DNA from: Antechinus flavipes
Taxonomy: Eukaryota
Direction: 5' to 3'
Length of the DNA stretch: 64,000 nt
NCBI RefSeq assembly: GCF_016432865.1
Contig: NC_067403.1
Span: 262,756,001 to 262,820,000 of the forward strand
In this document: positions 1 through 59,589 of the stretch, piece by piece
Position numbering within the stretch: the first letter of the stretch is position 1
How the letters are laid out: each line of letters begins with the position of its first letter
The notes under the pieces: model-generated
Told to the model about the DNA's origin: nothing
The model's input: the letters and a program-made list of their open reading frames with translations, nothing else
Database searches by the model: none
Translations under genes and position numbers: made by a program

Positions 1-375
1 AATTCCAGATTGCTCACCAGAGAATATTTTCAACAATAATAGCAGAACTGTGGGTTGAACAACTGAGAATGATTTCCCTATTTTCAGTAACCCAATGATT
101 TTGGAGAATCACAAAGGATTCTTGATGTAGCAGACTCTCCACCCCAGAGAAAGAATTTCAAGCATCTCAATAATGATCAAANNNNNNNNNNNNNNNNNNN
201 NNNNNNNNNNNNNNNNNNNNNNNNNNNNNNNNNNNNNNNNNNNNNNNNNNNNNNNNNNNNNNNNNNNNNNNNNNNNNNNNNNNNNNNNNNNNNNNNNNNN
301 NNNNNNNNNNNNNNNNNNNNNNNNNNNNNNNNNNNNNNNNNNNNNNNNNNNNNNNNNNNNNNNNNNCTTTTTTCT

Positions 376-1180: not shown

Positions 1181-1289
1181 TATGCTTCCTTTTTTCTTGC
1201 CTTCTTTCTCTCTTTCATCCTCTTTCTGTTTTTTCTATCTCTTTCTCTCTATCCCTTTTTGTTCAAGAATTTTTTTTCCACACAAATAG

Positions 1290-1691
1290 TGTTGGAATCC
1301 TTACTAACTGCTAACTAATTAGAGTTGATCTAATCTTACAAGAAGATGTTTTGGGCAGAACCTGAAACAAGGTACTAAGTAGAACTACCCATAATCCCTC
1401 TCTCTGGAAGGAGCATAAATAGGCCAATGGGCCAGTCGGAGAGTTCTTGAGAGGAAGATGCTACAAGTCGAGATTTCACCGGAATGACATGAAGACTGGA
1501 GCTGGCTGGAGGCTGAAGAAAGCAGAGGCAGAGGCTGAAGGACAAGACCTTTGGATTTAAAGACATTCGGAGAGAGCTCTTGGAACCAAGCAGAGAGATA
1601 GGCCTCTAAGCTAACCGGGCTATATTGGAGATAATAAAAGATCTGAACTTTTATCACCTGGCTGCGTTTTGAGAAGAAGAAGATCACAACA
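1290..1691 (+). mobile_element. Solo LTR (402 bp), copy 1
   Basis: TGTTG...CAACA termini, 5-bp TSD AATAG (1285-1289, 1692-1696) and internal AATAAA. The empty site CACAAATATGAATGTTG is seen in unit 2 (about 8390). Confidence 0.9.
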
Positions 1692-2496
1692 AATAGGAAT
1701 GTTGAAATGTGTTATATATTTATATATGCTTATGCTACAGCAAACTCTGTTCCTTTTCTGTGAGGTGAGAGGGAAATAAGGGCGGAAGAGACTTGAGAAC
1801 TCAAAACGTCAAGCAGGAAATATCAGGCATGGTTCTACATATACTTGAGGGAAAACCAATATTATTTTACAAATAGCCACAGTGAATACTGTCCCTTGCC
1901 AGCCACTGGATTAGAACCAGGGCACACCATGGCCCAAGGTGGGTGAGTTCCTGGTGTTCAGGGCCCTGCCCATTTCTTTCTTTATCAAAGGATAAAAGTC
2001 CTCTACCTTCCTACAGATTTTTCTTCACGTCAAGGTCTGGGTGAGCCTTTCCTGCTTTGTACCCCAATCTCTATAGTACCTGGACTCATGCACACAATGC
2101 TCCCCATCTTTGTTCCTAATTCCATCTGAAGTGCAAGCCCCACCTCACTGACCCCTGATCCTTGACCTGTTTTCCCCTCCTGCTGTGCTCTTTTGCTTGG
2201 AAAGGGGCAAGCCAGGATCCATCTCCCCACAGGAAGACAGCAATGAGCCCCAAGTCTCATGGATGGATTCCCAGGAAACTGCCTCCCCTGGCCTTAGTCC
2301 CCTCAGGATCCTGCTCCCTAGTCCAGCTCCTTCATCTCTGCTGGGTCAGGCACTCTTTGCCCAGCTGGCCCTTTGGGCTGGGCCCCCTTTTCCCTCCCTC
2401 CCTTCTCTCTCTCTCTCTCTCTGACTCTCTTCCTTCCTTCCTTCCTTCCTTCTTTCTTTTTTCTTTCCTTCCTCTACTTTATGCTTCCTTTTTTCT

Positions 2497-3301
2497 GTTT
2501 TTTTTTTAAATAACTCTTTATTGACAGAAACCATGCCAGGGTAATTTTTTTTACAACATTATCCCTTGCACTCACTTCTGTTCCGATTTTCCCCCTCCCT
2601 CCCTCCCTCCACCCCCTCTCCCAGATGGCACAGTCCTATACATGTTAAATAGGTCACAGTCTATCTTAGATACAGAAGTTAGAAATAACCCGGGAAGAAA
2701 AACCAAAATGCAAACAGTTTACATTCATTTCCCAGTGTTCTTTCTTTGGGTGTAGCTGCTTCTGTCCATCATTGATCAATTGAAACTGAGTTAGATCTCT
2801 CTGTCAAAGATGTCCACTTCCATCAGAATACATTCTCATACGATATCATTGTTGAAGTATATAATGATCTCCTGGTTCTGCTCATTTCACTTAACATCAG
2901 TTCATGTAAGTCTCTCCAAGCCTCTCTGTACATCCTGCTGGTCATTTCTTACACAACAATAATATTCCATAACGTTAATATACCACAATTTACCCAATTA
3001 TTTTCCAATTGATGGGCATCCATTCATTTTCCAGCTTCTAGCCACTACAAACAGAGCTGCCACAAACATTTTGGCGCATACAGGTCCCTTTCCCTTCTTG
3101 AAAAGTATCTCTTTGGGGTGTAAGCCCAATAGTAGCACTGCTGGATCAAAGGGTAGGCATAGTTTGATAACTTTTTGGGCATAATTCCAGCTTGCTCTCC
3201 AGAATGGTTAGATTCATTCACAACTCCACCAACAATGTATCAGTGTCTGAGTTTTCCCGCATCCCCTCCAACATTCATCATTATTTCTTCCTGTCATCTT
3301 A
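2497..3301 (-). mobile_element. 5'-truncated LINE-1 3' fragment, copy 2, with 17-bp TSD
   Basis: TSD TATGCTTCCTTTTTTCT at 2480-2496 and 3302-3318. Paralogous units (e.g. about 8285, 18410) show the empty site. Confidence 0.92.
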
Positions 3302-3410
3302 TATGCTTCCTTTTTTCTTGCCTTCTTTCTCTCTTTCATCCTCTTTCTGTTTTTTCTATCTCTTTCTCTCTATCCCTTTTTGTTCAAGAATTTTTTTTCC
3401 ACACAAATAG

Positions 3411-3812
3411 TGTTGGAATCCTTACTAACTGCTAACTAATTAGAGTTGATCTAATCTTACAAGAAGATGTTTTGGGCAGAACCTGAAACAAGGTACTAAG
3501 TAGAACTACCCATAATCCCTCTCTCTGGAAGGAGCATAAATAGGCCAATGGGCCAGTCGGAGAGTTCTTGAGAGGAAGATGCTACAAGTCGAGATTTCAC
3601 CGGAATGACATGAAGACTGGAGCTGGCTGGAGGCTGAAGAAAGCAGAGGCAGAGGCTGAAGGACAAGACCTTTGGATTTAAAGACATTCGGAGAGAGCTC
3701 TTGGAACCAAGCAGAGAGATAGGCCTCTAAGCTAACCGGGCTATATTGGAGATAATAAAAGATCTGAACTTTTATCACCTGGCTGCGTTTTGAGAAGAAG
3801 AAGATCACAACA
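3411..3812 (+). mobile_element. Solo LTR (402 bp), copy 2
   Basis: Identical to 1290-1691 at offset 2121. Confidence 0.9.
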
Positions 3813-4924
3813 AATAGGAATGTTGAAATGTGTTATATATTTATATATGCTTATGCTACAGCAAACTCTGTTCCTTTTCTGTGAGGTGAGAGGGAAATAA
3901 GGGCGGAAGAGACTTGAGAACTCAAAACGTCAAGCAGGAAATATCAGGCATGGTTCTACATATACTTGAGGGAAAACCAATATTATTTTACAAATAGCCA
4001 CAGTGAATACTGTCCCTTGCCAGCCACTGGATTAGAACCAGGGCACACCATGGCCCAAGGTGGGTGAGTTCCTGGTGTTCAGGGCCCTGCCCATTTCTTT
4101 CTTTATCAAAGGATAAAAGTCCTCTACCTTCCTACAGATTTTTCTTCACGTCAAGGTCTGGGTGAGCCTTTCCTGCTTTGTACCCCAATCTCTATAGTAC
4201 CTGGACTCATGCACACAATGCTCCCCATCTTTGTTCCTAATTCCATCTGAAGTGCAAGCCCCACCTCACTGACCCCTGATCCTTGACCTGTTTTCCCCTC
4301 CTGCTGTGCTCTTTTGCTTGGAAAGGGGCAAGCCAGGATCCATCTCCCCACAGGAAGACAGCAATGAGCCCCAAGTCTCATGGATGGATTCCCAGGAAAC
4401 TGCCTCCCCTGGCCTTAGTCCCCTCAGGATCCTGCTCCCTAGTCCAGCTCCTTCATCTCTGCTGGGTCAGGCACTCTTTGCCCAGCTGGCCCTTTGGGCT
4501 GGGCCCCCTTTTCCCTCCCTCCCTTCTCTGGGCAGCCACTCCCTGGTCCCCTCTCACCTGACACAGCACAGGACCATGGTCCCTGGAGCCCTCCTGTGGT
4601 CTTGCCCCCTTCATCCTTGGGTCATGGTTCCTTTGCCTTGTCTGCAGCAGCTTTCTCAGCCCTGCCTTGAGCCTGACTCCTCCCTCAGCCTGTTGCCTTA
4701 GGCATGGCCATGGGGCTCGGGAGCCTACCACCTTCTGCCAGGCACGTGCCTGCTGGCACCTGCTCCCAGATCTCCAGGAAGCTCCTGCTTCTTCCCTGGC
4801 TCTCGCCATCTCCTTGTCAGCTGGGGCTGATGTCGGGGAGTCTAGGAAAGAGAGGGCTTTTATCCTTTGCCTTGACCTCCCAGAGCCCCAGGTCCCTGTG
4901 ACCAGGGCCAAACAAGCCCGTTTG

Positions 4925-5134
4925 CCAATCTAGGCACCTGGTGCTTCCAGGTGAGTCATGGCCACAAGGCCTGCTCCCAAACAAACCAAAGGCTGACCCT
5001 GTAGCAGCCGGAGGCCAGTGTCCAACAACAGCCCAGGGAGCCAGGGGGCCTGCTCCTGCTTCTGCAGGGTGTCTGCCAGAGAGGCTGTGGGCATGTGCCC
5101 AGGCCTGCCCCCGGGACTGCACCACAGTATAAAA
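4925..5134 (+). promoter_or_regulatory. KRTAP5 gene 1 proximal promoter: CCAAT (4925), AP-1 TGAGTCA (4952), TATAAAA (5128)
   Basis: Motifs read directly; the same order and similar spacing recur in all five units. Confidence 0.8.
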
Positions 5135-5232
5135 GCTGAGAGCTGAGAGGGGCTTCCACAACCCACTGAATCCTCTCTCTCTTGAGACCTTCCTCCCCTG
5201 TGGAGACCAATCTCTTCCAATCTTTCAACATC

Positions 5233-5943
5233 ATGAGCTGCTGTGGCTGTTCAGGAGGCTGTGGTTCCAGCTGTGGGGGCTGTGGCTCCAGCTGCTGTGT
5301 GCCCGTCTGCTGCTGCAAACCTGTGTGCTGCTGTGTGCCAGCCTGCTCCTGCTCTAGCTGTGGTGGAGGCTGCAAGGGGGGTTGTGGCTCCAGCTGTGGG
5401 GGCTGCTGTCAGTCCAGCTGCTGCAAACCCTGCTGCAGCCAGTCCAGCTGTTGCCAGTCCAGCTGCTGCAAGCCTGTCTGCTGCTGTGTGCCAGCCTGCT
5501 CCTGTTCCAGCTGTGATGGAGGCTGTGGGGGTTGTTGCCAATCCAGCTGCTGCAAACCCTGCTGCAGTCAATCCAGCTGCTGCAAGCCTGTCTGCTGCTG
5601 TGTGCCAGCCTGCTCCTGCTCCAGCTGTGGTGGAGGCTGTGGGAGTTGTTGCCAATCCAGCTGTTGCAAACCTTGCTGCAGCCAGTCCAGTTGCTGCAAG
5701 CCTGTCTGCTGCTGTGTGCCAGCATGTTCCTGCTCCAGCTGTGGGGGAGGCTGTGGGGGTTGTTGCCAGTCCAGCTGCTGCAAGCCAGTCTGCTGCTGTG
5801 TGCCTGCTTGCTCCTGCTCCAGCTGTGGGGGAGGCTGTGGGGGTTGTTGCCAGTCCAGCTGCTGCAAGCCCTGCTGTAGTCAGTCCAGCTGCTGCAAGCC
5901 CTGCTGTAGTCAGTCCAGCTGCTGCAAGCCCTGCTGCTGCTAG
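5233..5943 (+). CDS. KRTAP5: Ultra-high-sulfur keratin-associated protein, KRTAP5 family, gene 1 (type A, 236 aa; ends at a CAG>TAG-derived stop)
   Basis: Intronless [46 protein letters not shown] with repeated CCQSSCCKP motifs. TATAAAA lies 105 nt upstream and AATAAA is at 6480. The ORF-track start at 5182 is a TTG; the true ATG is 5233. The exact paralogue number cannot be assigned. Confidence 0.9.
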
Positions 5944-6479
5944 TCCAACTGTTGTACCCTTTTTGCTACAAGTTTAGTATCTGCTGCTCACTCCATTCCC
6001 TTCCCTTCGACCTTAATTTAAAGCAGGCTGCCTTCAGTAAGTTCCCTCCTCCACTCCCAGCTGCCACCCACAGCTCCTATCTCAGCATCATTGCAGATTA
6101 CCCAGGACCCAGGACTCAGGACCATTTAGGAACCCTGATTCTGGGATTTCCTGATCTCCTTAGTCTGAAAACCACTGAGTCACAGGACTGCTCCCTATCC
6201 CCTTCTCCCCAACCTCCTTGCCAAAAGGGACATCACCCTGCCAAGAACATCTGGCAAAGGGCTGCCCAGTATACCATGCAGACCCCCAGTGGAACCTCTG
6301 GATCATCTCCAAAGGATCATCTGCCCTGCTCCCAGATGTGAGGCCATCACTGCTGATTGCTGAGCTGCCTCTCAACAGTCTTCATTCCTGGATGCCCCAA
6401 CTCTCTCCTCCAAAGGGTCTTATTGCTTATCTTGGGCTCCTTTGACTATCCCTGGAAACCAGGGAAATCATTTTGTTTC

Positions 6480-9473: not shown

Positions 9474-9683
9474 CCAATCTAGGTACCTGGTGCTTCCAGG
9501 TGAGTCATGGCCACAAGGCCTGCTCCCAAACAAATCAAAGCCTGATTCTGTGGCAGTCAGGGGCCAGTGTCCAACAACAGCCCAGGGAGCCAGGGGGCCT
9601 GCTCCTGCTTCTGCAGGGTGTCTGCCAGAGGGGCTGTGGGCACGTGCCCAGGCCTGCCCCTGAGGCTGAACCACAGTATAAAA
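9474..9683 (+). promoter_or_regulatory. KRTAP5 gene 2 promoter: CCAAT 9474, TGAGTCA 9501, TATAAAA 9677
   Basis: Motifs read directly; paralogous to the gene 1 promoter. Confidence 0.8.
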
Positions 9684-9781
9684 GCTGGGAGCAGAGAGGG
9701 GCTTCCACAACCCACGGATTCCTCTCTCTCTTGAGACCTTCCTCCCCTGTGGACACCAATCTCTTCCAATCTCTCAACATC

Positions 9782-10442
9782 ATGAGCTNNNNNNNNNNNN
9801 NNNNNNNNNNNNNNNNNNNNNNNNNNNNNNNNNNNNNNNNNNNNNNNNNNNNNNNNNNNNNNNNNNNNNNNNNNNNNNNNNNNNNNNNNNNNNNNNNNNN
9901 NNNNNNNNNNNNNNNNNNNNNNNNNNGCTGTGGTGGAGGCTGCAAGGGAGGCTGTGGCTCCAGCTGTGGAGGCTGCAAGGGAGGCTGTGGCTCCAGCTGT
10001 GGAGGCTGCAAGGGAGGCTGTGGCTCCAGCTGTGGGGGCTGCAAGGGTGGCTGTGGCTCCAGCTGTGGGGGCTGCAAGGGAGGCTGTGGCTCCAGCTGTG
10101 GGGGCTGCAAGGGAGGCTGTGGCTCTAGCTGTGGGGGCTGCTGTCAGTCCAGCTGCTGCAAGCCTGTCTGCTGCTGTGTGCCTGCTTGCTCCTGCTCCAG
10201 CTGTGGTGGAGNNNNNNNNNNNNNNNNNNNNNNNNNNNNNNNNNNNNNNNNNNNNNNNNNNNNNNNNNNNNNNNNNNNNNNNNNNNNNNNNNNNNNNNNN
10301 NNNNNNNNNNNNNNNNNNNNNNNNNNNNNNNNNNNNNNNNNNNNNNNNNNNNNNNNNNNNNNNNNNNNNNNNNNNNNNNNNNNNNNNNNNNNNNNNNNNN
10401 NNNNNNNNNNNNNNNNNNNNNNNNNNNNNNNNNNNNNNNNNN
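9782..10442 (+). CDS. KRTAP5: KRTAP5-family gene 2 (type B, 6 [11 protein letters not shown] repeats); partial, stop codon lies inside an N-run
   Basis: ATG at 9782 follows the conserved leader, with TATA at 9677. The frame is open across N-run 9789-9926. 3'UTR-homologous sequence resumes at 10443, so the end coordinate is an upper bound. AATAAA at 10909. Confidence 0.8.
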
Positions 10443-13400
10443 CCATTTGACTGTGAGGAAAACTTGCCCTGCCTCAGCAAGACTCCTCCTCCACTCCTAG
10501 CTCCCACACAGCATCCTTGCTGATGACCCAGGACCCAAGATCATCAAGGAACCCTGAGTCTGGGATTTCCTGATCTCCTTTCTTAGCCAGGAAATAGCAG
10601 TGTCATAGGAGCCTTCTCAACCCTCATCCTCCCATCCTTCACAAATTCTTCTACCTACTCTACCAAGGGGTCATCACCCTGCCAAGAACACCCAGCAAAG
10701 GGCTGCCCAACACATTATGCAGACCCGCAGTGCAACCTCTGGTAATCTCCAAAAGATCATCTGTCCTGACCCCAGATGTGGGGCCAGCGCTGGGGATTGC
10801 TGAGCTGCCTCATTCCTGGACTCCCCAAGTCTCTCCTTCTGAAGTGTCTCTTTGCTTTTCTTGGGTACCTTTAACTGAACCTGGAAATCCAGAAAATCAT
10901 TTTCTTTCAATAAAAGCTACTCTTAACCCTGAAAATGTCTTGCTTTCCTTCACAAAACTCTTGGGGTGATCTGCTGCCTGTGCCTTGAGTACTTAGTCAG
11001 CCCTTTTCACAGGCAGATACATTCGGGGCTCTTGGGTTCTTGGCCTGGCACATTGGGTGATCAGGGGACATTGGCGGAGACTTGATCCCTTTGACATATT
11101 TCTCTTGCCTTAAGTCAACACCGAGAGACTTCTCAGGAGGAGGAGCTCAATTCCAAAAGCTCAAGCTTTTAGAACCCATTCTGGGCACAAAGCAGTTGAC
11201 TTTGAGGGAGTTGAGCCTCCATTTTCCAAAGGAAACAGTCAATGTCTAGGGCTTAAGGGGCTGCCCTAATGTCTCCTGCCTGCCCTTCTCCAGTCAGCCT
11301 GGGCTTCACAAGGATGCTGGTAGAGGCATGGCTGCCCCATTCTCCAAATGCTCTTGCTTTCCCTGAGCAGACCCAGCCCCTGGTCAAACACACAAGAGCC
11401 ATGCTCCCTTTATCTTGAACCAGTGTACTTGAGTATGAGCACCTTAGGGAGACCACAGCTTTCTACTGATCTCTACTGAACTGGATCTGTTTACATTCAT
11501 TCAGGTGTTGGCTCTGCATGTGTTGGGAAACTGATTGAGACTCTCTTCCAGGCGACTAATTGCACTGCTCTCCTTTATGTTCTCAAAAAACAAAACAAAA
11601 AACAACAACAGTAATTTAAAAAACCAGAAAAATCTATCATGTTGAGAGAAATGTATATATTGTGAGTTAGACCAAAAAAAAGGACACACAGACACACAGA
11701 AACTGAGAGACAGAGACTGACTGAGAGGCACAGAGAGAGACACACAATTAAATGGGGGTGTGTCTTTCACCAAAGTATTTCCTCCAGAAGATTATTGCTA
11801 TGGTAGTGATAACAAAACCTGGGAGGGATAAGACAAACAGAGAAGTATTGAAAAATTCCAGGAAGGAACTGTCAAAAATCAAGCAGAAATAAAATGGAAA
11901 ACCAAAGGAGCAGCCATTCTTTCATAAATATGCAGTGACCCCTTTTTACAAATTGCAAAAAACAATTCTCTGAACATTTTGCCCATGATCTGGAAAAAAA
12001 GAAAATCTCTTTGCATCAACTATCAGTTGGGAAGAAAAGCACCACCAAGAATATATAGTCATGCAGATGAGAATGTCCTTGGCTAAGAGATCCCACCTGC
12101 TTCTATAGTTTGGTAGAGCACCTAAAAAGGAAAGAAAGAAGGTCTCTCCCCTATGCTTTATCCTGTTACTCAGAAAGGTCTGCACCTACTCAGAGAAGGA
12201 GAGGAGTGTTTCTATCTGGCCCATGCCAATTTTCAGAAAAAAAGTTGCTACTCAAGTGGCTAGAAAGCTGGTATCCCATCTCTCTGAAGAGCAAGAAAAA
12301 CCTTGGAGCTGTAGGCACAAGACGCTTTTGAAGAACACCAAAAGATCACCAGGATCAGGGTTAGATTGAAAGAAGATGGGAGGAGGTGGGAGAGAGGGGG
12401 AGAAGAGGCTATCATGTCTGCAAGAATGGTTCACCTGACAACCTGGTAGTGCACAAAACAGTAGAACAGCAGATGAAGCAAATAGATGAGCAGGGCAAGA
12501 CCTCATTGTATCCAGACCATGGAGCCCCTGGCTTTTCAAGAAGCCCAGTTCATGGAGAAAGGACTGTTCTCATCCCTTTCATGACAAAAGGCTTCAGTGG
12601 ATTGTGGCTGGAGGGATAGAAAGAAACGAGTTAGGTTCCATCTCTTTGGGAAGTTTGCCTTCCAGGTGAGCCTAGGCTTGAATTGATGAGGAGCCAGGGG
12701 GCTTAGCAAGGAGAAGGTGGCCACGGGGTAAGATGGGCCACAATGAGCTTGGGTCAGTGGCCAAAGGTCTTTTTTTGAAGGGTTAGTGGATGCAGATGGT
12801 AAGGCAAAGATGGTGGTCAGGTGAGCCTTGGTGAGGAGATTCAAAAGTGGCAAAGGCAGAGGCAGCTTCTGGGGACAGGAAGGTGGTGCCAAGAGCACAG
12901 CATTTGAGTGAAGAAAGGAGCAAATCTTCCTGGGGATCTTTCCTTTCAAAGGCATATGGGGTCTCACCTGACTGGCTGAGTTAGGGACCTTTGGCTGGGA
13001 AACGAATCCTTTCCAAGCTTCCTATTGGCTGCAGGCCCTGTTCTCAATCCTGACCAGTCCAAGATGGAAAGCTCAACCTGGCAGGGCCAAAGCAGCACAA
13101 GGAACATAGAGAGGAGCTTTCCAGCCAGGGGAGAGATGCAAGAATCCAGTCACTAAGTACTATGGGACCAGGTATCAATATGCATCATAAAGTGCTAAGT
13201 ATCCAAACAATCTCTTCATCCCTAGGAGCCAAAGAGGAGCACTAGGGCAAAGGAAGAGACTGGGGACATAGGACACTAGGAACAGTATGATTTGCTAAAC
13301 ACAAAGACACAAGCTTTGGGGACAAAACACATCCTTTGAGAAAAACTGCTAGGAAACATGGAAAACAGGAAGGAAGAATGAAAGTGTAGACCAACCTCTC

Positions 13401-14599
13401 ACACCACATGACAAGAGAAGATCCATACATCATTTACACCTAAAAGATGATATCTCCAATAAATGCTTGAACTGGGGTAGGGAGATTATTTACTACCCAA
13501 CAGGATTCAGGGAGCATGCTGAAATGCAATAGGGGACATTCTGATTAGGTGACATTCAAAGAAATTTGCCCAAAAGTGGAGGTGGGGCTAGGCCTATGGC
13601 TCAGCCCCTATTTCTCCAATAGACAGAGAAATGGGTCAAAGGGATGATAATTTGGACTTCCGGTGCGGAGCCAAGATGGCGGAGCAGGCACACACAACTC
13701 TCTAAGCTCCTCTCATTCCCCTCATAACCAACTACTTAATCCAGCCTCAAAAATAGCTCTTCACTGCTTAAATTCATGAAGATGAGAAGCACTACAACTT
13801 ACCAGCCGAAGTCAATCCGGAAGCTCGCCAGGAAAGGTTTGTCCTGTGGGGCCAGGAACAGACTAGCACAGGTAGTGAGAGACTAGTGTCCTGAGCAGAC
13901 CAGGGGCGGGGGTGATCTCTGTGGCTAGAGAAGTTATAGAGACGACTCTGCTATAGGCTAACTGCTCTGCCTTGATTACAGAGCAGTAAACTGGCAGAGA
14001 AATTAAAGCCTAAAACAGAGGGAACTCTAAAAAACGCCAGAACCTAACGAGATCTGGCTGTAACCCCTCAAACCTGGAAGTGACTTAGGCAGACTGTAAG
14101 GCAGCCCTGCAGCCACGTCCTGCAGTTCGGGGCTTTTGCGAGGGCAGTTACAAATCTGCACGGCAAGGAGGCACAGCCTGGGCAGCCTCTAATCGGCAGA
14201 GTGGGGGGCTCAACCTGGGGCAATAGAACTTCCCCAGCTGACTGTGCTTCGGGGCAGACACTTCCAGTCCCAGCAAATCCATTCACTGCTCAGCTGCTAA
14301 TACCCACAGTCCCAGGGCGGGATTTGGCTTGGGAAGTAAAACTCTCACTGCTCAGTGTCTAGCCCCAGGGCAGTCGTTATCTCACACAGCGGGGGTTCTT
14401 TGCAGGGCACTTTCCCAGCTCTGCCCTGCAGGCCTGAGTTACTCCGGGGTGGGGAACTCTTTCCCAGAGCACTCCAGTACCTCGCTGCTTTTTGGAGCCG
14501 GCTGGCAGGACAGCTACCCATCCATATACCTTTCACTGCTCTGCAGAGGAAGCTGGTAATCTCCTGGCCCTGAAGGCAGACCTTACAGTCTTTAACAAA

Positions 14600-15693
14600 A
14601 TGAGTAAAAAAAATCAAAAGAACGATTGATAGTTTCTATACAGAAAAAGAACAGCTTTTCAACCCTGAAGAGACTAATAGCAGACAGTCTCCAGACAATT
14701 GGTCTCCAATACAAAAGGCTCTCCTAGAAGAGACTATTAAAAACCTTAAAAGAGAGCTAGAAGAGAAATGGGGAAAGGAAAGAGAAGCTATGCAAGAGAG
14801 CAACAACTTCCTGAAATGTGAATTGGAAAAGATAAAAAACTCCCAAGAAGTGCAGGGAAACAGAATTTGCGAATTGGAAAAAGAAAATAACTCACTAAAA
14901 AAAAAAAAAAAATTAGTGAAATGGAAAAAAATTCCATAGAGCAAAACAACTCAATTGGACATATACAAAAAGAAGTAAAAAAAGCTAATGAAGAAAATAA
15001 CTCATTAAAAATCAGAACTGAACAAATAGAAATGACTGATTCATTGAGACATCAAGAATCAGTCCAGCAAAACCAAAAAAAATGAAAGATCGGGGAAAAA
15101 TGTCAAAGATTTACTTGGAAAAACAACAGACCTGGAAAATAGATCTAGGAGAGATAACCTGAGGATCATCGGACTACTAGAAAATTATGACGAAAAAAAG
15201 AGCCTAGATACTATTTTACAGGAAATCATCAAAGAGAACTGCCCAGAAGTAATAGAACCGGAATGGAAAATAGGCATTGAAAGAATTCATCAAACACCTT
15301 CTGAAAAAGACCCTAAAATAAAGACTCCGAGGAATATTGTGGCCAAACTTCAGAATTTTCAGACTAAAGAAAAAATTTTACAAGCAGCCAGGAAAAAACA
15401 GTTCAAATACCGAGATGCCACAATAAGGGCTGCCTCAGCATTAAAGGATCGAAGGGCCTGGAATCAGATATTCTGAAAGGCAAAAGAACTTGGAATGCAG
15501 CCAAGAATAAACTACCCAGCTAAGCTGAGTATTTTTTTTCCACGGAAGAAGATGGACATTTAGTGAAACCGAGGAATTTCATCTGTTTCTAAGGAAAAAA
15601 CCAGACTTAAACAAAAAATTTGATCTCCAACAACAGGAATCAAGAGAAGTAGAAAAAGGAGAAACTAGACAACATAGTAAAGTAAGAGAATAG
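14600..15693 (+). pseudogene. Disrupted L1 ORF1p (coiled coil, RRM, CTD)
   Basis: Hand translation gives DLENRSRRDNLRIIGL (15129-15176), IERIHQ, PRNIVAK and PRINYPAKLS motifs typical of L1 ORF1p. Frameshifts occur in A-runs and there is an in-frame TGA at 15474. Confidence 0.88.
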
Positions 15694-15938
15694 AGTTCAA
15701 CACAACTCCTCCTACAAGTACTTCAACAAAGATGAGAAACTGAAGGATACACTGCAAGACTCAAGTGTTTCATTCAAGTCCTCTATCTTCAGAGTCGATG
15801 TTCTTTTTACTTGCCATTGTGCTTCCCATGGTCAGGCACACTGTAACATGCCCTTGACTCCTGTGTCTCCAAATGCTGTATTTGGAGTGACCAAATAAAT
15901 GTCTCCTCCCCAACCCACTCACAAAAAAAAAAAAAAAA

Positions 15939-16137
15939 GATGGAGCACAGGACCTGGAGTCAAGAAGAACTGAATTCAAATCTAGCCTCACATCCTGCCT
16001 AGCCCTGGACAAGTCATTTTACCTCCGACTATCTGACAAAATGGATCCACTGGATCCACTAGGGAAGATCTCTGTCAAGAAAAGGCCAAATGGGGACAAC
16101 AAGGGCTGGACATGGCTGTCACAATTGAGCAACAACC
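15939..16137 (+). mobile_element. CORE-SINE with RTE-like tail (MAR1-type), inside the transduced segment
   Basis: GACCTGGAGTCAAGAAGAACTGAATTCAAATCTAGCC head and CAAGAAAAGGCCAAATGGGG...CAACAAC tail. Confidence 0.7.
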
Positions 16138-16189
16138 AGAGAGAAGTTTTCCTGATGCCAGGCCCAGCCTTCTAGCCACTGTGCCACCC

Positions 16190-16410
16190 AAAATGCCCTT
16201 ATTAATATGCCTATTAGCAACCTTTGTGTTATATATGTTTATTTTAATATGTGCCTATTAACACTTTTGTGTTATATATTATGTGTTAATTTTAATATGT
16301 GCCTATTAACAATCTTTGTGTTATATGTTATATATTAATTTTAATGTGTGCCTATTAACAATTTTGTATTATCTTAATTTTTAACATATACCTATTACAA
16401 TTTTTTGTTT
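16190..16410. repeat. AT-rich minisatellite (about 40-bp unit TTAATATGTGCCTATTAACA..TTTGTGTTATAT, about 5 copies)
   Basis: The CCTATTA core recurs at about 40-bp intervals. Confidence 0.8.
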
Positions 16411-16971
16411 TATTAAAAAAATTCATATGATCAAAAAAAAAAAAAAGGGATGATAATTCTAGCTATTCTCCAACTGACCAATGGTCAAACAACAGGAAGA
16501 AGCTATTTTGAGACAAAAAAAACAAAAAAAGTTCTAATCTTACATCAAAATACTCTAAATCAGCCTAGATCAGAGAAATGCAAGTTAAATACTTTGGAGC
16601 TCCCATCTCAGACCCATCAGATTGGTCCTTGGGAAGAAAAAAGGAAAACAATAGCTTTTGGAGGACCTCTGCAAAAATTGGGATATGGATGCACTCTGAG
16701 TAAAGCTGTGCATTGATCCACACATTTGGGAAAACCATTTAAAACTATGCCCAAGGGCCAGGACACTCAGAATACATTTTGAGGTAGCAGAACCATGATT
16801 TGGTCTATATTCCAAAGAGATTTCAGAAAGAACCTCTCAGTACTCAATGTTTGTAGGAGCTGTTTGTGGCATGGCTCAGAATGAGCAATGAAGGGAATGC
16901 ACCTCGTTGGGGACCAGCTCAACAAGCGGTGCCATTCCATTAGGGGGAACTCTCAGTGTGCTCTAAGACAT

Positions 16972-18091
16972 TCAAAGGATATGAACAGACAATTTTCAGA
17001 TGATGAAATTGAAACTATTTCCACTCATATGAAAGAGTGTTCCAAATCACTATTGATCAGAGAAATGCAAATTAAGACAATTCTGAGATACCACTACACA
17101 CCTGTCAGATTGGCTAAGATGACAGGAAAAAATAATGTTGTATGTTGGAGGGGATGCAGGAAAACTGGGATACTGATGCATTGTTGGTGGAGTTGTGAAC
17201 GAATCCAACCATTCTGGAGAGCAATCTGGAATTATGTCCAAAAAGTTATCAAACTGTGCATACTCTTTGATCCAGCAGTGCTACTATTGGGTTTATACCC
17301 CAAAGAGATACCTTTTCAAGAAGAGAAAGGGACCTGTATGTGCCAAAATGTTTGTGGCAGCCCTGTTCGTAGTGGCTAGAAGCTGGAAAATGAATGGATA
17401 CCCATCAATTGGAGAATGGCTGGGTAAATTGTGGCATATGAATGTTATGGAATATTATTGTTCTGTAAGGAATGACCAGCGGGATAAATACAGAGAGGCT
17501 TGGAGAGACTTACATGAACTCATGCTAAGTGAAATGAGCAGAACCAGGAGATCATTATACACTTCAACAACGATACTGTATGAGGATGTATTCTGATGGA
17601 AGTGGAATTCTTCGACAAAGAGACCTAACTCAGTTTCAATTGATCAATGATGGACAGAAGCAGCTACACTGGGAAATGAACGTAAACTATTTGCATTTTT
17701 GTTTTTCTTCCTGGGTTATTTTTACCTTCTGAATCCAATTCTCCCTGTGCAACAAAAGAAGTGTTCAGTTCTGCAAACATATATTGTATCTAGGATATAC
17801 TGCAACATATTTAACATATATAAGACTGCTTGCCATCTAGGGGAAGGGGTGGAGGGAGGGAGGGGAAAAAATCAGAACAGAAGCAAGTGCAAGGGATAAT
17901 GTTGTAAAAAAAAATTACCCTGGCATGAGTTCTGTCAATAAAAAGTTATTATAAAATTTTAAAAAAAGAATAAAAGAAATGTGTTTTTCAAGCAAAAAAA
18001 AAGTTTTAAAGTTTGAAACACAGTTTTGCAGGGATGAATGTTGAGAGCTATCTATGCATGTATTTAAAAAATAAAAAGCTAAAAAAAACTA
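16972..18091 (+). mobile_element. 5'-truncated young L1 (ORF2 C-terminus and 3'UTR) plus about 110 bp of extra 3' sequence
   Basis: ORF track shows L1 ORF2 C-terminal peptides (KDMNRQFS, LLIREMQIKT, HCWW). AATAAA at 17937. TSD AAGACAT at 16965-16971 and 18092-18098. The empty site CTAAGACATAATC is seen in unit 1. Confidence 0.88.
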
Positions 18092-20055: not shown

Positions 20056-20153
20056 GCTGGGAGCTGAGAGGGGCTTCCACAACCCACTGACTCCTCTCTC
20101 TCTTGAGACCTTCCTCCCCTGTGGACACCAATCTCTTTCAATCTCTCAGCATC

Positions 20154-20828
20154 ATGAGCTGCTGTGGNNNNNNNNNNNNNNNNNNNNNNNNNNNNNNNNN
20201 NNNNNNNNNNNNNNNNNNNNNNNNNNNNNNNNNNNNNNNNNNNNNNNNNNNNNNNNNNNNNNNNNNNNNNNNNNNNNNNNNNNNNNNNNNNNNNNNNNGC
20301 TGTGGTGGAGGCTGCAAGGGAGGCTGTGGCTCCAGCTGTGGAGGCTGCAAGGGAGGCTGTGGCTCCAGCTGTGGAGGCTGCAAGGGAGGCTGTGGCTCCA
20401 GCTGTGGGGGCTGCAAGGGAGGTTGTGGCTCCAGCTGTGGGGGCTGCAAGGGAGGCTGTGGTTCCAGCTGTGGGGGCTGCAAGGGAGGCTGTGGCTCCAG
20501 CTGTGGGGGCTGCAAGGGAGGCTGTGGCTCCAGCTGTGGGGGCTGCTGTCAGTCCAGCTGCTGCAAGCCTGTCTGCTGTTGTGTGCCTGCTTGCTGCTGC
20601 TCCAGCTGTGGTGGAGNNNNNNNNNNNNNNNNNNNNNNNNNNNNNNNNNNNNNNNNNNNNNNNNNNNNNNNNNNNNNNNNNNNNNNNNNNNNNNNNNNNN
20701 NNNNNNNNNNNNNNNNNNNNNNNNNNNNNNNNNNNNNNNNNNNNNNNNNNNNNNNNNNNNNNNNNNNNNNNNNNNNNNNNNNNNNNNNNNNCTGCTGTGC
20801 ACCCATTTGCTGCCAGTGTAAGATCTGA
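20154..20828 (+). CDS. KRTAP5: KRTAP5-family gene 3 (type B, 7 [11 protein letters not shown] repeats, ends [11 protein letters not shown])
   Basis: ATG 20154, TGA 20826-20828, TATA 20049, AATAAA 21338. Two internal N-runs (20168-20298, 20617-20791). Confidence 0.85.
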
Positions 20829-22580
20829 GGCTCACTTCATCCATTCCCCATTTGACTGTGAGGAAAACTTGCCCTGCCTCAGCAAGACTTCTCCTCCACT
20901 CCCATCTCCCACCCACAGCTCTTGTCTCAGCATCCTTGCTGATGACCCAGGACCCAGCACCATCAGGGAACCCTGAGTCTGGGATTTCCTGATCTCTTTA
21001 CTTATCCTTACAACAGCCCTTCCAGAGGAACCCTCTTTATCCCCTTCTCCCCATCCTTCCCAGGCTCTCCAACTTCCCCGGTCAAGGGGACATCACCCTG
21101 CCAAGAACAACCGGCAAAGGGCTGCCCAGCAAACCATGCAGACCCCCAGGGGAACCTCTGGTCATCTCCAAGGATCATCTGCCCTTCTCCCAGATGTGAG
21201 GCCATCACTGGGGATTGCTGCACTGCCTCCCAACAGCCTTCATTCCTGGATTCCCCAACTCTCTCCTCCAAAGGGTCTCTTTGCTTATCTTGGGCTCCTT
21301 TGGCTGTCCCTGGAAACCAGGGAAACAATTTTGTTTCAATAAAAGCTACCCTTAACCCTGAAAATGTTTTGCTTTCCTTCATAAATCTCTTAGGGTGATC
21401 TGCTACCAGGCCCCTGAGCACTTAGTCAGCCCTTTTCATAGGCAGGTACATTTGGGGTTCTTGGGATCTTGGTCTGGCCCATTGGGAGATCAGCATACAT
21501 TGACCTAGAACTGGTTCCTTTGCCACATTCCTCTTGCCTTCGATCAACACTGAGTGACTTCTCCAGGGGATGAGCTCAATTCCAAGTGCTCAAGCTTTTA
21601 GAGCCCATTCTGAGTACACAGCACTTGGCTTCGAGGAAGTTGGGCCTCCATTTTCCAAGGGAAACACTCAATGTCTAGGGCTTAAGGCTCCTGCCTGCCC
21701 TTCTCCAGTCAGCTTGGGCTTCAGAAGGATGCATGTAGAAGAATGACTGCCCATTCTCCAGCTGACTCCAAATGCTCTTGCATTCCCTAAGCAGACCCAG
21801 CCCCTGGCCAACCACACAGAAGCCATGCTCCCTAAATGTGTAAGCAGTGCACTTGAGTATTAGCACCTCTGGGAGGCCTGTGCTTTCTACTGATCTCTGC
21901 TGAATTGGATCTGCTTACATCCATTCGGGTGTTGGCTCTCCATGTGTTGGGGAACAGTCTTACTCAGACTCTCTTCCAGGGGTTTAATTGCGCTGATCTT
22001 AGAAAACAGGCCTACCTAACATGATTCTGGGAAATGCACATATTGTGAGTTAGAGAAGAAAAGGACACACAGAAACTGAGAGACAGAAACTGACACAGAG
22101 GGACAGAGAGAGACACAGAGTTAGTTAGGGGTTTGCATTTCTCCAAATTATTTTATCAAGAAGATGATTGTTATGGTAGTGATAACAAAACTTGAAAGGG
22201 ATAAGACAGAAAAGTATCAAATACCTCCAGGAAGGAACCATCAAAAATAAAGCAAAAATAAAATGAAAGCCATAAGAAGCAGCCATTCTGTCATAAATAT
22301 GCATTGGCTCCTGTTTATAGAATACAAAAACAGTTCTCTGAACATTTTGTGCAAGATCTGGAATGATAGAAAATCTCTTTGCATCAACTATCAGTTGGAA
22401 AGAGAAGCACCACCGAAAATATATGGTTATACAGAGGAGAATGGCCGTGGCTAAGAGAGCGCACCTGCTTCTAAAGTTAGTTGGAGCCCCAAAAAGAGAG
22501 GAAAGAAAGCTCTTTTCTAGAATGTTTTCAACAGCACCCACCTGAGACCAAGTGCCAGCACCACTGGGAATGGGGAAAGA

Positions 22581-27098: not shown

Positions 27099-27300
27099 CC
27101 AATCCAGGCACCTGGTGCTTCCAGGTGAGTCATGGCCACAAGGTCTGCTCCCAAACAAACCAAAGCCTGACCCAGAGGCAGCCAGTGTCCAACAACAGCC
27201 CAGGGAGCCAGGGGGCCTGCTCCTGCTTCTGCAGGGTGTCTGCAGAGGGGCTGTGGGCACGTGCCCAGGCCTGCCCCCGGGGCTGCACCACAGTATAAAA
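27099..27300 (+). promoter_or_regulatory. KRTAP5 gene 4 promoter: CCAAT, TGAGTCA 27126, TATAAAA 27294
   Basis: Motifs read directly. Confidence 0.8.
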
Positions 27301-27398
27301 ACTGGGAGCTGAGAGGGGCTTCCACAACCCACTGTCTCCTCTCTCTCTTGAGACCTTCCTCCCCTGTGGACACAAATCTCTTCCAATCTCTCAACATC

Positions 27399-28148
27399 AT
27401 GAGCTGCTGTGGCTGTTCAGGAGGCTGTGGCTCCAGCTGTGGAGGCTGTGGCTCCAGCTGCTGTGTGCCCGTCTGCTGCTGCAAACCTGTGTGCTGCTGT
27501 GTGCCAGCCTGCTCCTGCTCTAGCTGTGGTGGAGGCTGCAAGGGAGGCTGTGGCTCTAGCTGTGGGGGCTGCAAAGGAGGCTGTGGTTCCAGCTGTGGGG
27601 GCTGCAAGGGAGGCTGTGGTTCCAGCTGTGGGGGCTGCAAGGGAGGGTGTGGCTCCAGCTGTGGGGGCTGCAAGGGGGGCTGTGGCTCCAGCTGTGGGGG
27701 CTGCAAGGGGGGCTGTGGTTCCAGCTGTGGGGGCTGCAAGGGAGGGTGTGGCTCCAGCTGTGGGGGCTGCAAGGGGGGCTGTAGCTCCAGCTGTGGGTGC
27801 TGCAAGGGAGGCTGTGGCTCTAGCTGTGGGGGCTGCTGTCAGTCCAGCTGCTGCAAACCTTGCTGCTGCCAGTCCAGCTGCTGCAAGCCTGTCTGCTGTT
27901 GTGTGCCTGCTTGCTGCTGCTCCAGCTGTGGTGGAGNNNNNNNNNNNNNNNNNNNNNNNNNNNNNNNNNNNNNNNNNNNNNNNNNNNNNNNNNNNNNNNN
28001 NNNNNNNNNNNNNNNNNNNNNNNNNNNNNNNNNNNNNNNNNNNNNNNNNNNNNNNNNNNNNNNNNNNNNNNNNNNNNNNNNNNNNNNNNNNNNNNNNNNN
28101 NNNNNNNNNNNNNNNNNNNNNNNNNNNNNNNNCCAGTGTAAGATCTGA
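27399..28148 (+). CDS. KRTAP5: KRTAP5-family gene 4 (type B, 9 [11 protein letters not shown] repeats, ends QCKI*)
   Basis: ATG 27399, TGA 28146-28148, TATA 27294, AATAAA 28649. One internal N-run (27937-28132). Confidence 0.88.
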
Positions 28149-31100: not shown

Positions 31101-32158
31101 TCAAAGACAGGTGAGGTCTGGCCTTCCTGGCTGAGCTAGGGACCTTTGGCTGGGGAGCTAATCCTCTCCAACCTTCCTATTAGTTGCAGGCCCTGTCCTC
31201 AATCCTGCCCAATCCAAGAGGGAAAGCCCCACCTGCAGGGCCAAAGCAGCACAAAGAACAAAGAGAAGAGCCTCCCTGCCTGGGGTGGGATGCAAGAATG
31301 CAGCCACAAGACTCCTATGGGACCAGGTGTCAATGTGCATCATAAGGTGCTAAGTATCCAAACCAGCTCTTCCTCCAAAGGAAACAAAGGGGAGAGCTAG
31401 AGCAGGGGAAGAGACTCGGGACACAGGACACTAGGAACTGTACAGTTTGCTGAACCCAAAGACCCAAGCTTTAGGGATAAAACTCATTCATTGACAAAAA
31501 CTGCTGGGAAACATGGAACACAGGAAGGCAGAATGAAGGTGTAGACCAGCCTCTCTCACCACATGCCAAGAGAAGATGGATCCATCATTTAGACCTAAAA
31601 GCTGATATCTCCAATCCATGCTAGAGCTGGCTGATCTATGGATCGGGATATGACTGAGTACCCAACAGGATCCAGGGAGCATGCTGACATGCAAGAGGGA
31701 GCATTTGGATTAAGTGACATTCAAGGGATTTGCCCAAAGAAAACCAAATCCGCACTAGTTGGAACAAAAGCAGGTTGGAGGTAGGGCTGGGCCTGTGTGT
31801 ATTACCCAAAGTAGCTCTGCTTCAGCCCCCATTTCTCCAGTAGAGGGTGAATTGGGTCAAAGGCATGAGAATCCTTGCTATTCACCAACTAACCAATGGT
31901 CAAACAATAGGAAGAAGCAATTTTGAGACAAAGAAATCCAAGGAGACTCATGTCTTATGCCAAAATGGCCTAAATTGGCTGGATCAGAGAAGTGCAAGTC
32001 GAACACTTTGGAGCTCCCACCTCAGACCCATCAGATTGGTCTTTGGGAAGTAAGGAAAAACAGTGGATTTCAAAGGACCCCTGGGAAAACTGGGACATGG
32101 ATACACATTGAGTGAACTGATCCACACATTTAGGAAAGACATTTAAAACTATGCCCAA

Positions 32159-34689: not shown

Positions 34690-34785
34690 GCTGGGAGCAG
34701 AGAGGGGCTTCCACAACCCACTGACTCCTCTCTCTTGAGACCTTCCTCCCCTGTGGACACCAATCTCTTCCAATCTCTCAGCATC

Positions 34786-59572: not shown

Positions 59573-59589
59573 GTGAGGGGCAGGGGCGG

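What the first reader, a model, noticed from the sequence alone, without database searches (positions are those of the whole stretch)
13638..16458. TSD-bounded ORF1-only L1 retroelement (HAL1-like) carrying non-L1 cargo
Seen in sequence: an intact L1 5' start, a 0.95-kb 5'UTR and a full-length (now disrupted) ORF1, then no ORF2 at all. About 0.8 kb of unrelated sequence and a poly(A) tail follow, all enclosed by a perfect 15-bp TSD. The paralogous unit at 31854-31905 shows the colinear empty site, so this was a single target-primed insertion rather than an L1 that lost its 3' end at this locus. Known: half-L1 (HAL1) non-autonomous elements encoding only ORF1p exist in mammals, including marsupials. 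Inference: this may be an unnamed HAL1-like family, or a chimeric retrocopy mobilised in trans by L1 ORF2p.
Basis: partly seen in the sequence, partly recalled or inferred. Interest (0 to 1): 0.75.

Follow-up and report, generated by a model that had tools for sequence, protein, structure and literature searches.

The report
ORF1-only L1 with borrowed tail
A 2.8-kb jumping-gene copy in a marsupial hair-keratin gene cluster has an L1 promoter and first gene but, instead of the L1 copying enzyme, the end of a host transcript plus carried-along flanking DNA. That borrowed tail is present hundreds of times in this species and two relatives but only once in a more distant one, so it looks like a young L1-dependent parasite family rather than a one-off accident.

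Summary
A perfect 15-bp duplication (13638-13652 and 16444-16458) encloses a 947-nt L1 5'UTR, a broken full-length ORF1 and 785 nt of non-L1 sequence ending in poly(A). There is no ORF2. Two window paralogs, and a contig from a related species that joins 13651 directly to 16458, show the empty site. It is therefore one young target-primed insertion.

L1 homology stops at 15657-15660, at the end of ORF1. What follows has two parts:
- A 266-nt piece with AATAAA and A16.
- A decayed MIR-like fragment plus 49-bp AT-rich repeats, ending in ATTAAA and a poly(A) tail.

In Logan contigs of three related organisms, both parts reach several hundred times single-copy depth. In a fourth organism the first part is one single-copy contig and the AT-rich part is absent, although L1 ORF1 is equally abundant there.

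My best reading (confidence 0.55) is a lineage-specific, HAL1-like composite family. L1 5'UTR-ORF1 fused to a host transcript end, was extended by 3' transduction, and is moved in trans by L1 ORF2p.

No other copy carrying the L1/cargo junction could be fetched, and Repbase/Dfam could not be queried. Another note in this scan (s1-204833, unchecked) reports a similar ORF1-only element elsewhere in this genome.

The parts
13638..13652 (+). Left target-site duplication, AAAGGGATGATAATT
   Evidence: Exact 15/15 match to 16444-16458. The site occurs once in the paralog at 31.86 kb.
13653..14599 (+). L1 5'UTR (947 nt) with a YY1-box-like AAGATGGCGG at 13673-13682
   Evidence: Summed contig depth jumps from about 2e2 to 5e5 in the bin that starts at 13651, in all four runs. 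The YY1 reading rests on my memory of the human L1 promoter.
14600..15660 (+). L1 ORF1, full length but broken: frame changes at homopolymer runs, stops at 14627 and 15474, and an in-frame 5-codon gap at 15439
   Evidence: Frame tracing is. Pfam gives PF02994 at E=1.4e-11 and PF17490 at E=5e-4. Homology runs to ...SREVEKG at nt 15660. The 5-residue gap is shown and by the loose ends at 15439/15441.
14897..14912 (+). A16 run inside ORF1, the site of a frame change
   Evidence: Tandem Repeats Finder and frame tracing.
15657..15660 (+). L1/cargo junction, with a 2-4 nt overlap (AGGA)
   Evidence: ORF1p homology ends at 15660. The single-copy contig of organism F aligns from 15657 (record 29). The L1-level depth ends within the first 10-20 nt of bin 15640-15756.
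15657..15922 (+). Cargo 1: 266 nt that look like the 3' end of a polyadenylated host transcript, with AATAAA at 15894-15899. The ORF1 frame runs on to a stop at 15691-15693.
   Evidence: Organism F has one contig (1467 nt, depth 29) matching 15657-15908 with 19 differences and unrelated sequence on both sides. In X1/X2/X6 the depth is 13852/25196/37859, against single-copy depths of about 30-42. No Pfam, Rfam or tRNA match was found.
15923..15938 (+). Internal poly(A), A16, starting 23 nt after AATAAA
15939..16207 (+). Decayed, 5'-truncated MIR/CORE-SINE-like genomic fragment
   Evidence: It aligns to another MIR-like copy at about 39.5-39.7 kb over about 85 nt. About 390 contigs per run match 15940-15990 and then continue as ...CTTACTAGCTGTGTGACCCTGGGCAA (loose ends at 15990). 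Bins 15991-16224 read 1.8-4.9e4 in X1/X2/X6 against about 880 in X9.
16208..16432 (+). AT-rich tail with 3.5 copies of a 49-bp unit (16208-16372) and ATTAAA at 16412-16417
   Evidence: Tandem Repeats Finder, GC 19%, signal position. Depth is 32663/21078/56846 in X1/X2/X6 and 0 in X9.
16433..16443 (+). Terminal poly(A). The run extends to 16446 if the first three A's of the duplication are counted.
16444..16458 (+). Right target-site duplication
   Evidence: The contig of organism C joins 13651 directly to 16458 (record 17).
31854..31905 (+). Empty site in a paralogous unit that runs straight across the insertion point
   Evidence: Alignments A1 and A2.

Best explanation
This is one copy of a lineage-specific, non-autonomous composite retrotransposon of the HAL1 type.

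Proposed mechanism:
1. Transcription starts at the internal promoter in the L1 5'UTR and runs through ORF1.
2. ORF2 and the L1 3'UTR are replaced. At 15657-15660 the L1 RNA is joined to the last 266 nt of a host Pol II transcript (AATAAA plus A16). The join arose either by splicing from a donor at the end of ORF1 into a terminal exon, or by template switching of the reverse transcriptase.
3. A founder copy was read through its weak first poly(A) site into about 490 nt of downstream genomic DNA. This DNA is an old MIR-like fragment plus 49-bp AT-rich repeats. Transcription ended at ATTAAA, which is a classic 3' transduction.
4. The polyadenylated RNA is copied into new sites by ORF2p supplied in trans by autonomous L1s. 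The copying is target-primed reverse transcription at a TC/AAAG nick, which makes the 15-bp duplication.

What is shown and what is inferred:
- Shown: the anatomy, the single insertion, and absence of the insertion at the same site in a related species.
- Shown: amplification of the 3' module in three related genomes, and its single-copy state in a fourth.
- Inferred: the module amplified as part of the promoter-bearing L1-ORF1 composite.
- Inferred: the way the junction arose, and the dependence on ORF2p.
For: Single insertion event:
- Perfect duplication, poly(A) tail, and empty sites in two paralogs.
- The single-copy contig of organism C (depth 30.7) joins 13651 to 16458, with flanks about 3% diverged (record 17).
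- The flank contigs of organism A (0 differences) and organism B (2 differences) both stop at 13629, next to the repeat.

L1 part and junction:
- PF02994 and PF17490 hits and marsupial ORF1p homology run to nt 15660.
- L1-level depth (about 1e6) ends at about 15650-15658.

The 3' module is a repeat only in the A/B/C lineage:
- Cargo 1 equals about 450/590/1230 single-copy depths in X1/X2/X6, against 1.3 in X9 (one contig with unique flanks).
- The AT-rich tail equals about 1070/500/1850 single-copy depths, against 0 in X9.
- X9 carries L1 ORF1 at the same depth as the other three.

Cargo 1 and the tail behave as one unit:
- Their depths are similar and vary together across the three species.
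- In X1, depth falls steadily towards the 5' end across the A16 (32.7k, 26.7k, 17.8k, about 14k, 8k). That is what 5'-truncated retrocopies would give.

Other points:
- The MIR-like piece is more than 20% diverged from the abundant SINE (loose ends at 15990). It is therefore old genomic DNA, not a fresh SINE insertion.
- Neither 3' part carries a promoter. The L1 5'UTR is the only promoter-bearing module seen.
- This copy differs from all other copies at only 6 of 266 cargo positions (table 3), which fits a recent copy of a family.
- Unchecked notes in the same genome report another ORF1-only element (s1-204833) and a 'host-transcript end carrying a MIR' between target-site duplications (s1-215357).
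Against: - No second copy with the L1/cargo junction was retrieved. The poly(A) runs were skipped by the read tool, so no contig is shown to bridge 15909-15948.
- Only about 1-6 single-copy equivalents of contigs span this copy's distinctive ORF1 stretch at 15427-15428 (table 3). That is far fewer than the hundreds seen for the cargo. So either full-length siblings are rare, the 5-codon gap belongs to a small sub-lineage, or the cargo family does not carry this ORF1.
- The tool warns that summed contig depth is not a copy number.
- This copy's ORF1 is broken in at least six places. Coding capacity of the family is unknown.
Confidence: 0.55

Rival explanations
1. One-off chimera. The 3' module (cargo 1, A16, MIR-like piece, AT-rich tail) is a separate multi-copy retroposon or other repeat of this lineage. 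In this single event the reverse transcriptase switched from that RNA onto an L1 RNA at the end of ORF1. Alternatively, an L1 transcript was spliced into one copy of the module. Either way, the L1/cargo junction would exist only here.
For: Very few contigs span this copy's distinctive ORF1 stretch at 15427-15428: depth 186/32/40 in X1/X2/X6, against thousands for the cargo. No junction-bearing sibling was found by any route. Chimeras made by template switching fit the layout of an RNA 5' end joined to another RNA's 3' end.
Against: The module has no recognisable promoter: no tRNA or Rfam match, and a 5'-truncated, decayed MIR head. Amplification to hundreds of copies without a promoter-bearing partner is therefore hard to explain. 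An internal A16 shows that the module's founder was itself a retrocopy. Another ORF1-only element is reported in the same genome (s1-204833, unchecked).
Confidence: 0.25
2. Two nested insertions. First, an ORF1-plus-cargo 1 retrocopy ending in poly(A) inserted. Later, an independent A-tailed retroposon (15939-16443) landed in that poly(A) tail, so its own target-site duplication is hidden among the A's.
For: There are two poly(A) runs of similar length (A16 and A11-14), each 10-23 nt after its own signal. L1 endonuclease prefers A/T-rich targets.
Against: The whole 2.8 kb is missing from the orthologous contig of organism C, so both hits would have to fall on the same 16 bp within about 3% of divergence. 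The MIR-like piece is old and decayed, not a fresh SINE (loose ends at 15990). Cargo and tail depths track each other across species, and in X1 they form one 5'-ward gradient.
Confidence: 0.12
3. Internally deleted L1. The tail 15657-16443 is the 3'UTR of a young, lineage-specific autonomous L1 subfamily, and this copy has simply lost ORF2. That would make it a classic bipartite HAL1.
For: PMC5786205 describes HAL1 as an internal-deletion derivative. L1 lineages do sometimes replace their untranslated regions (PMC5753468).
Against: Tail depth is 20-100 times lower than ORF1 or 5'UTR depth. In a 5'-truncating family the 3' end should be the most abundant part. The tail shows no similarity to the L1 ORF2/3' fragment at 16.7-18.1 kb or to anything else in the window. 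Cargo 1 is single-copy with non-L1 flanks in organism F.
Confidence: 0.06
4. Assembly artefact: a false join of L1 and unrelated repeats.
For: No single Logan contig spans the element. Several frame changes lie in homopolymer runs, where long-read assemblies make errors.
Against: A perfect 15-bp duplication at exactly the L1 5' end and just after the poly(A) run, together with a precise empty site in a relative and in paralogs, is the signature of real retrotransposition.
Confidence: 0.02

Closest known systems
HAL1 (half-L1) non-autonomous L1 derivatives (Smit 1999; Bao & Jurka 2010, as summarised in PMC5322556, PMC5753468 and PMC5786205)
   Same: L1 5'UTR plus ORF1 only, no ORF2, poly(A) tail, target-site duplications, and presumed dependence on L1 ORF2p. 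HAL1s are said to have arisen several times independently in mammals.
   Different: PMC5786205 describes HAL1 as a bipartite internal-deletion derivative that keeps the L1 3' part. Here the 3' end is not L1. It is a host-transcript end plus transduced flank. Sharing of the structure by many copies, and an intact ORF1 in source copies, are not shown.
SVA/LAVA-type composite retrotransposons of hominoids and gibbons (assembled by splicing and transduction; PMC4859970)
   Same: A mosaic of unrelated modules joined at the RNA level, lineage-specific amplification to 10^2-10^3 copies, and mobilisation in trans by L1 with poly(A) tail and target-site duplication.
   Different: SVA and LAVA carry no L1 promoter or ORF1. 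This element begins with a complete L1 5'UTR and ORF1. It is a marsupial element, not a primate one.
L1 3' transduction
   Same: A first poly(A) signal is bypassed, downstream genomic DNA is carried along, a second signal and poly(A) follow, and one target-site duplication encloses everything. Other notes report many such events in this genome.
   Different: The unit upstream of the transduced DNA is not an L1 3' end. It is an L1-ORF1/host-transcript chimera. The source locus was not identified.
Template-switch chimeric retrocopies (U6-L1 type) and spliced L1 retrocopies (SpIREs). From my own knowledge; not checked in a paper here.
   Same: The 5' part starts at an RNA's true 5' end, the 3' part is another RNA's polyadenylated 3' end, there is no A-run at the junction, and a short overlap (AG/AGGA) sits at the join.
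   Different: Those are normally single events. Here the 3' partner is amplified several hundred-fold in the lineage.

Membership tests
HAL1 (half-L1) | L1-derived 5'UTR and ORF1 (coiled coil, RRM, C-terminal domain) | tested here: met
   PF02994 at E=1.4e-11 and PF17490 at E=5e-4. Identity to marsupial L1 ORF1p is 57-71%. The 5'UTR and ORF1 share L1-level depth.
HAL1 (half-L1) | No ORF2 (endonuclease/reverse transcriptase) | tested here: met
   Only 785 nt follow ORF1, with no L1-like ORF. Depth drops 20-100-fold after 15657.
HAL1 (half-L1) | 3' part derived from the L1 3' end (bipartite internal-deletion derivative, PMC5786205) | tested here: not met
   This test is indirect. The tail is far rarer than L1, and it is absent or single-copy in organism F, which has abundant L1. 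It shows no similarity to the L1 3' fragment in the window. No L1 consensus was available for a direct comparison.
HAL1 (half-L1) | Poly(A) tail and target-site duplication at an L1-endonuclease-like site | tested here: met
   A11-14 tail, 15-bp perfect duplication, and a TC/AAAG target.
HAL1 (half-L1) | A family: many copies sharing the ORF1-to-3'-end structure, each with its own target-site duplication | tested here: inconclusive
   The 3' module is at several hundred single-copy depths in three genomes. No other copy with the junction was retrieved (look-up of encoding contigs closed). Few contigs span the distinctive ORF1 stretch at 15427-15428.
HAL1 (half-L1) | Source copies encode an intact ORF1p | not testable with these tools
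   This copy is broken in at least six places. Other copies could not be read.
L1 3' transduction | Bypassed upstream poly(A) signal, downstream non-element DNA, second signal plus poly(A), and one target-site duplication around everything | tested here: met
   AATAAA at 15894 with A16, then 494 nt, then ATTAAA at 16412 with a poly(A) tail. The duplication is at 13638 and 16444.
L1 3' transduction | An identifiable source locus whose downstream flank equals the transduced segment | not testable with these tools
   Only the 64-kb window is readable, and it holds no second copy.
Chimeric retrocopy (template switch or splicing) | 3' partner derives from a single-copy transcribed host locus | tested here: inconclusive
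   Organism F has one contig (depth 29) matching 15657-15908 inside unrelated sequence. Transcription, gene identity and a splice acceptor at 15657-15658 could not be checked.

The most novel reading that the evidence does not exclude
This would be a marsupial counterpart of the birth of SVA or LAVA. An L1 promoter plus ORF1 captured the terminal exon of a host gene by splicing at the end of ORF1, then picked up flanking DNA by 3' transduction. The composite spread to hundreds of copies within one marsupial clade after it split from a relative that still has only the single-copy progenitor. That would give a datable, step-by-step record of how a new L1 parasite forms. It would also show that ORF2p was recently active in a group where L1 activity is reported to be declining (PMC4408412, PMC5010896), if this genome belongs to that group.
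Probability: 0.4. Interest if true: 0.6.

Novelty: new variant of a known kind. Interest (0 to 1): 0.45.

Why it matters
ORF1-only L1 derivatives are known and are said to arise repeatedly, but how they form is rarely visible. Here the intermediate steps can still be read:
- an exact L1/host junction at the end of ORF1;
- an internal poly(A) scar;
- a transduced flank;
- an apparent single-copy progenitor in an outgroup species;
- an empty orthologous site in a sister species.

If the junction is shared by many copies, this is a young, datable composite family. It could serve as a phylogenetic marker and as a read-out of recent L1 ORF2p activity in this marsupial lineage. If it is not shared, this is an ordinary one-off chimera.

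Tried and rejected
Attempts to fetch sibling copies all failed:
- A word-based protein search with the minus-strand ORF that spans cargo 1, A16 and the MIR-like piece found no candidates.
- Exact 24-mer scans of JGI metagenome contigs, one for the junction and one for cargo 1, found 0 matches.
- Scan notes searched by sequence gave blanks.
- The window itself has no second copy of any part of the element.

The cargo could not be identified. Rfam gave only one chance-level match, to a miRNA model inside the 5'UTR (E=0.64). ARAGORN found no tRNA. Pfam gave nothing for the 70-codon open frame at 15686-15895. I treat the cargo as non-coding.

A possible inverted SINE-head fragment at about 16150-16195 scored too weakly to claim.

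Steps not possible or not taken:
- Bao & Jurka 2010 is not held, so HAL1 features are taken from papers that cite it.
- An ORF1p tree against HAL1 consensus sequences was not possible, because no such sequences were available.
- I did not use the large protein search or the third word search. Pfam already settles the protein, and the length limits exclude full-length ORF1p.

Full report
**1. The observation**

The stretch 13638-16458 is bounded by the perfect 15-bp direct repeat AAAGGGATGATAATT, at 13638-13652 and 16444-16458. The window holds a tandem array of about 7-8-kb units that are 71-94% alike.
- The unit at 31.86 kb runs straight across a single, diverged copy of the target.
- The unit at 25.72 kb has matching flanks with an 18-bp deletion over the target.

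The 2.8 kb was therefore inserted into one unit after the units had diverged. The pre-insertion site reads GGGTC/AAAGGG, a loose version of the TT/AAAA target of L1 endonuclease (from my own knowledge).

**2. Anatomy**

- 13653-14599 is a 947-nt 5'UTR with 53% GC. It carries AAGATGGCGG at 13673, which resembles the YY1 box near the start of human L1 (the resemblance is from memory).
- ORF1 starts at ATG 14600 and can be followed through three frames to 15660.
- The piece 15048-15473 hits the L1 RRM domain PF02994 at E=1.4e-11. The piece 15477-15560 hits the C-terminal domain PF17490 at E=5e-4.
- The best relatives are marsupial L1 ORF1 proteins: unnamed ENA contigs at 68-71% identity, wombat at 65%, and Monodelphis at 57-61%.
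- Homology runs to ...SREVEKG, which is nt 15660, where the Monodelphis proteins also end.
- The frame is broken at A/T runs (about 14606, the A16 at 14897-14912, about 15075, about 15532) and by stops at 14627, 15474 and 15691. An in-frame 5-codon gap lies at 15439 (loose ends).

Nothing after 15660 resembles L1. The rest is made of:
- 15657-15922, with AATAAA at 15894 and an A16 at 15923-15938.
- A 5'-truncated, decayed MIR/CORE-SINE-like fragment at 15939 to about 16207.
- AT-rich sequence with 3.5 copies of a 49-bp unit.
- ATTAAA at 16412, then poly(A) from 16433.

**3. Evidence from other genomes**

One search found runs of several coded organisms that hold the stretch. I laid Logan contigs of four of them on 13300-16800 at 80% likeness or more. 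Single-copy flank contigs have depth of about 30-42.

(a) State of the site in each organism:
- Organism A's flank contig is identical (0 differences in 330 nt) and stops at 13629.
- Organism B's flank contig has 2 differences and stops at the same place.
- Organism C has one contig (record 17, depth 30.7) that joins 13651 directly to 16458. This is a precise empty site, with flanks about 3% diverged.

The insertion is therefore younger than the A/C split.

(b) Summed depth across the element:

| Segment | X1 | X2 | X6 | X9 (organism F) |
|---|---|---|---|---|
| 5'UTR | 2-7e5 | 2-7e5 | 2-7e5 | 0.7-3e5 |
| ORF1 | about 1e6 | about 1e6 | about 1e6 | about 1e6 |
| Cargo bin 15757-15873 | 13852 | 25196 | 37859 | 38.5 |
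| MIR-like bins 15991-16224 | 1.8-2.7e4 | 2.0-2.2e4 | 3.8-4.9e4 | about 880 |
| AT-rich bin 16225-16341 | 32663 | 21078 | 56846 | 0 |

- Depth collapses within the first 10-20 nt of bin 15640-15756.
- In X9 the cargo is one contig of 1467 nt (depth 29). It matches 15657-15908 with 19 differences and has unrelated sequence on both sides.
- Divided by single-copy depth, the 3' module stands at roughly 450-1850 equivalents in A, B and C. It is single-copy or absent in F.
- The tool warns that this is not a copy number, so I use it only as an order of magnitude.

(c) All other copies, and F's single-copy locus, differ from this copy at 15693, 15702, 15718, 15740, 15808 and 15866. This copy therefore carries about 2.3% private change in the cargo, including the letter that makes its stop at 15691-15693.

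(d) In X1, depth declines steadily towards the 5' end across the A16 (32.7k, 26.7k, 17.8k, about 14k, about 8k). A family of 5'-truncated retrocopies with cargo and tail as one unit would give this pattern.

(e) Against a large full-length family: contigs that span this copy's distinctive ORF1 stretch at 15427-15428 sum to only 186/32/40 in X1/X2/X6.

**4. Interpretation**

The cargo has three properties:
- It starts exactly where ORF1 homology ends.
- It ends with a poly(A) signal and an A-run at the right distance.
- It is single-copy inside unique DNA in the outgroup.

It therefore looks like the 3' end of a host Pol II transcript joined to L1 RNA. The overlap at the join (AG/AGGA at 15657-15660) fits either of two routes:
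- Splicing, in which exon 1 ends ...AAAAAG and the AG is the acceptor in the genomic copy.
- Template switching with microhomology.

I could not read F's contig to decide between them.

The internal A16 followed by old genomic DNA, and then a second signal and tail, is the structure of a 3' transduction from a founder copy. The MIR-like piece is more than 20% diverged from the abundant SINE, because those contigs lose alignment at 15990. It is therefore not a fresh SINE insertion.

None of the 3' parts has a promoter, yet they reached hundreds of copies after the split from F. The most economical driver is the L1 5'UTR that this copy carries. That is why I prefer a HAL1-like composite family moved in trans by L1 ORF2p (confidence 0.55).

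The main rival (0.25) is that the 3' module is a separate repeat and that this locus is a one-off L1/module chimera. Point 3(e) favours that rival. The lack of a promoter, and the unchecked notes s1-204833 and s1-215357 in the same genome, weigh against it.

The remaining rivals:
- Two nested insertions (0.12). This is unlikely, because both would have to hit the same 16 bp after the A/C split.
- An internally deleted L1 with a subfamily-specific 3'UTR (0.06). This is unlikely, because the tail is 20-100 times rarer than the 5' parts.
- An assembly artefact (0.02).

**5. Comparison with known elements**

HAL1 elements encode only ORF1, have a poly(A) tail and target-site duplications, depend on L1, and are said to have arisen several times in mammals (PMC5322556, PMC5753468, PMC4859970, PMC3183009). 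PMC5786205 classes them as bipartite derivatives that keep the L1 5' and 3' parts.

This element works like a HAL1 but fails the '3' part from L1' feature. In how it was assembled it is closer to SVA/LAVA-type composites (PMC4859970). No paper in the held library describes a HAL1 in Australian marsupials. That is not evidence that none is in Repbase or Dfam.

If the genome is a dasyurid, a family that inserted after a species split would bear on the reported decline of L1 activity there (PMC4408412, PMC5010896). The only hint for this is an unchecked note about an OC1 transposon.

**6. Limits**

- No sibling copy was read.
- Repbase and Dfam were not available.
- The poly(A) runs were skipped by the read tool, so bridging of 15909-15948 in other copies is not shown.
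- No RNA run was laid, so expression is untested.

**7. Verdict**

I rate it a new variant of a known kind, of moderate interest (0.45).

Noticed in passing
window 4900-5950, 9500-10450, 20100-20830, 27260-28150, 34570-35430: A tandem array of cysteine-rich CCx[10 protein letters not shown]-repeat ORFs that look like KRTAP5-type ultra-high-sulphur keratin-associated protein genes (my reading from composition; no Pfam hit). Several are partly N-masked. The element sits in a spacer of this array.
   Followed up: partly
window 367-2408 versus 2488-4529: A 2042-bp direct duplication at 100% identity, separated by only 80 bp. The other units are 71-94% alike. It is either a very recent duplication or an assembly artefact.
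   Followed up: no
window 55150-55389, 59416-59580, about 59975-61462 (+): Exons of a dual-specificity phosphatase gene, with Rhodanese at E=3.9e-5 and DSPc at E=6.7e-8, and a long proline/serine-rich last exon. From memory, the neighbourhood with KRTAP5-like genes recalls DUSP8 at human 11p15.5.
   Followed up: partly
window 16888-17596 (+): An older L1 ORF2 C-terminal fragment (...MQIKTILRYHYTPVRLAKM...CWRGC...HCWWSCE...) just downstream of the element. It is part of the duplicated unit, with paralogs at about 26.0 and 32.7 kb. It shows no similarity to the element's tail. There was no Pfam hit at 1e-3, so the identification is from memory.
   Followed up: partly
window 13673-13682: AAGATGGCGG lies 21 nt from the L1 5' end and resembles the YY1 site that fixes transcription initiation in human L1. 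This would be a conserved feature between a marsupial and a primate L1 5'UTR, if it is real.
   Followed up: no
same genome, other windows (notes s1-192130, s1-192152, s1-180326, s1-183244): Several first-stage notes describe L1 copies that have an intact 5' end but stop inside ORF1 and lack a poly(A) tail, yet have perfect 15-17-bp target-site duplications. Together with the high 5'UTR depth relative to ORF1, this suggests an unusual abundance of 5'-end-only L1 copies in this genome.
   Followed up: no
window 15427-15441: Next to its 5-codon gap, this copy's ORF1 differs from the majority L1 sequence mostly at third codon positions (GCT GCC TCA GCA against GCA GCT TCC ACx in the loose-end consensus). 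This hints at a separate ORF1 lineage that diverged while still coding.
   Followed up: partly
runs X16 and X17 (organism F, RNA): Two RNA-seq runs hold about 16% of the sampled words of 13300-16800, presumably from the L1 part.
   Followed up: no
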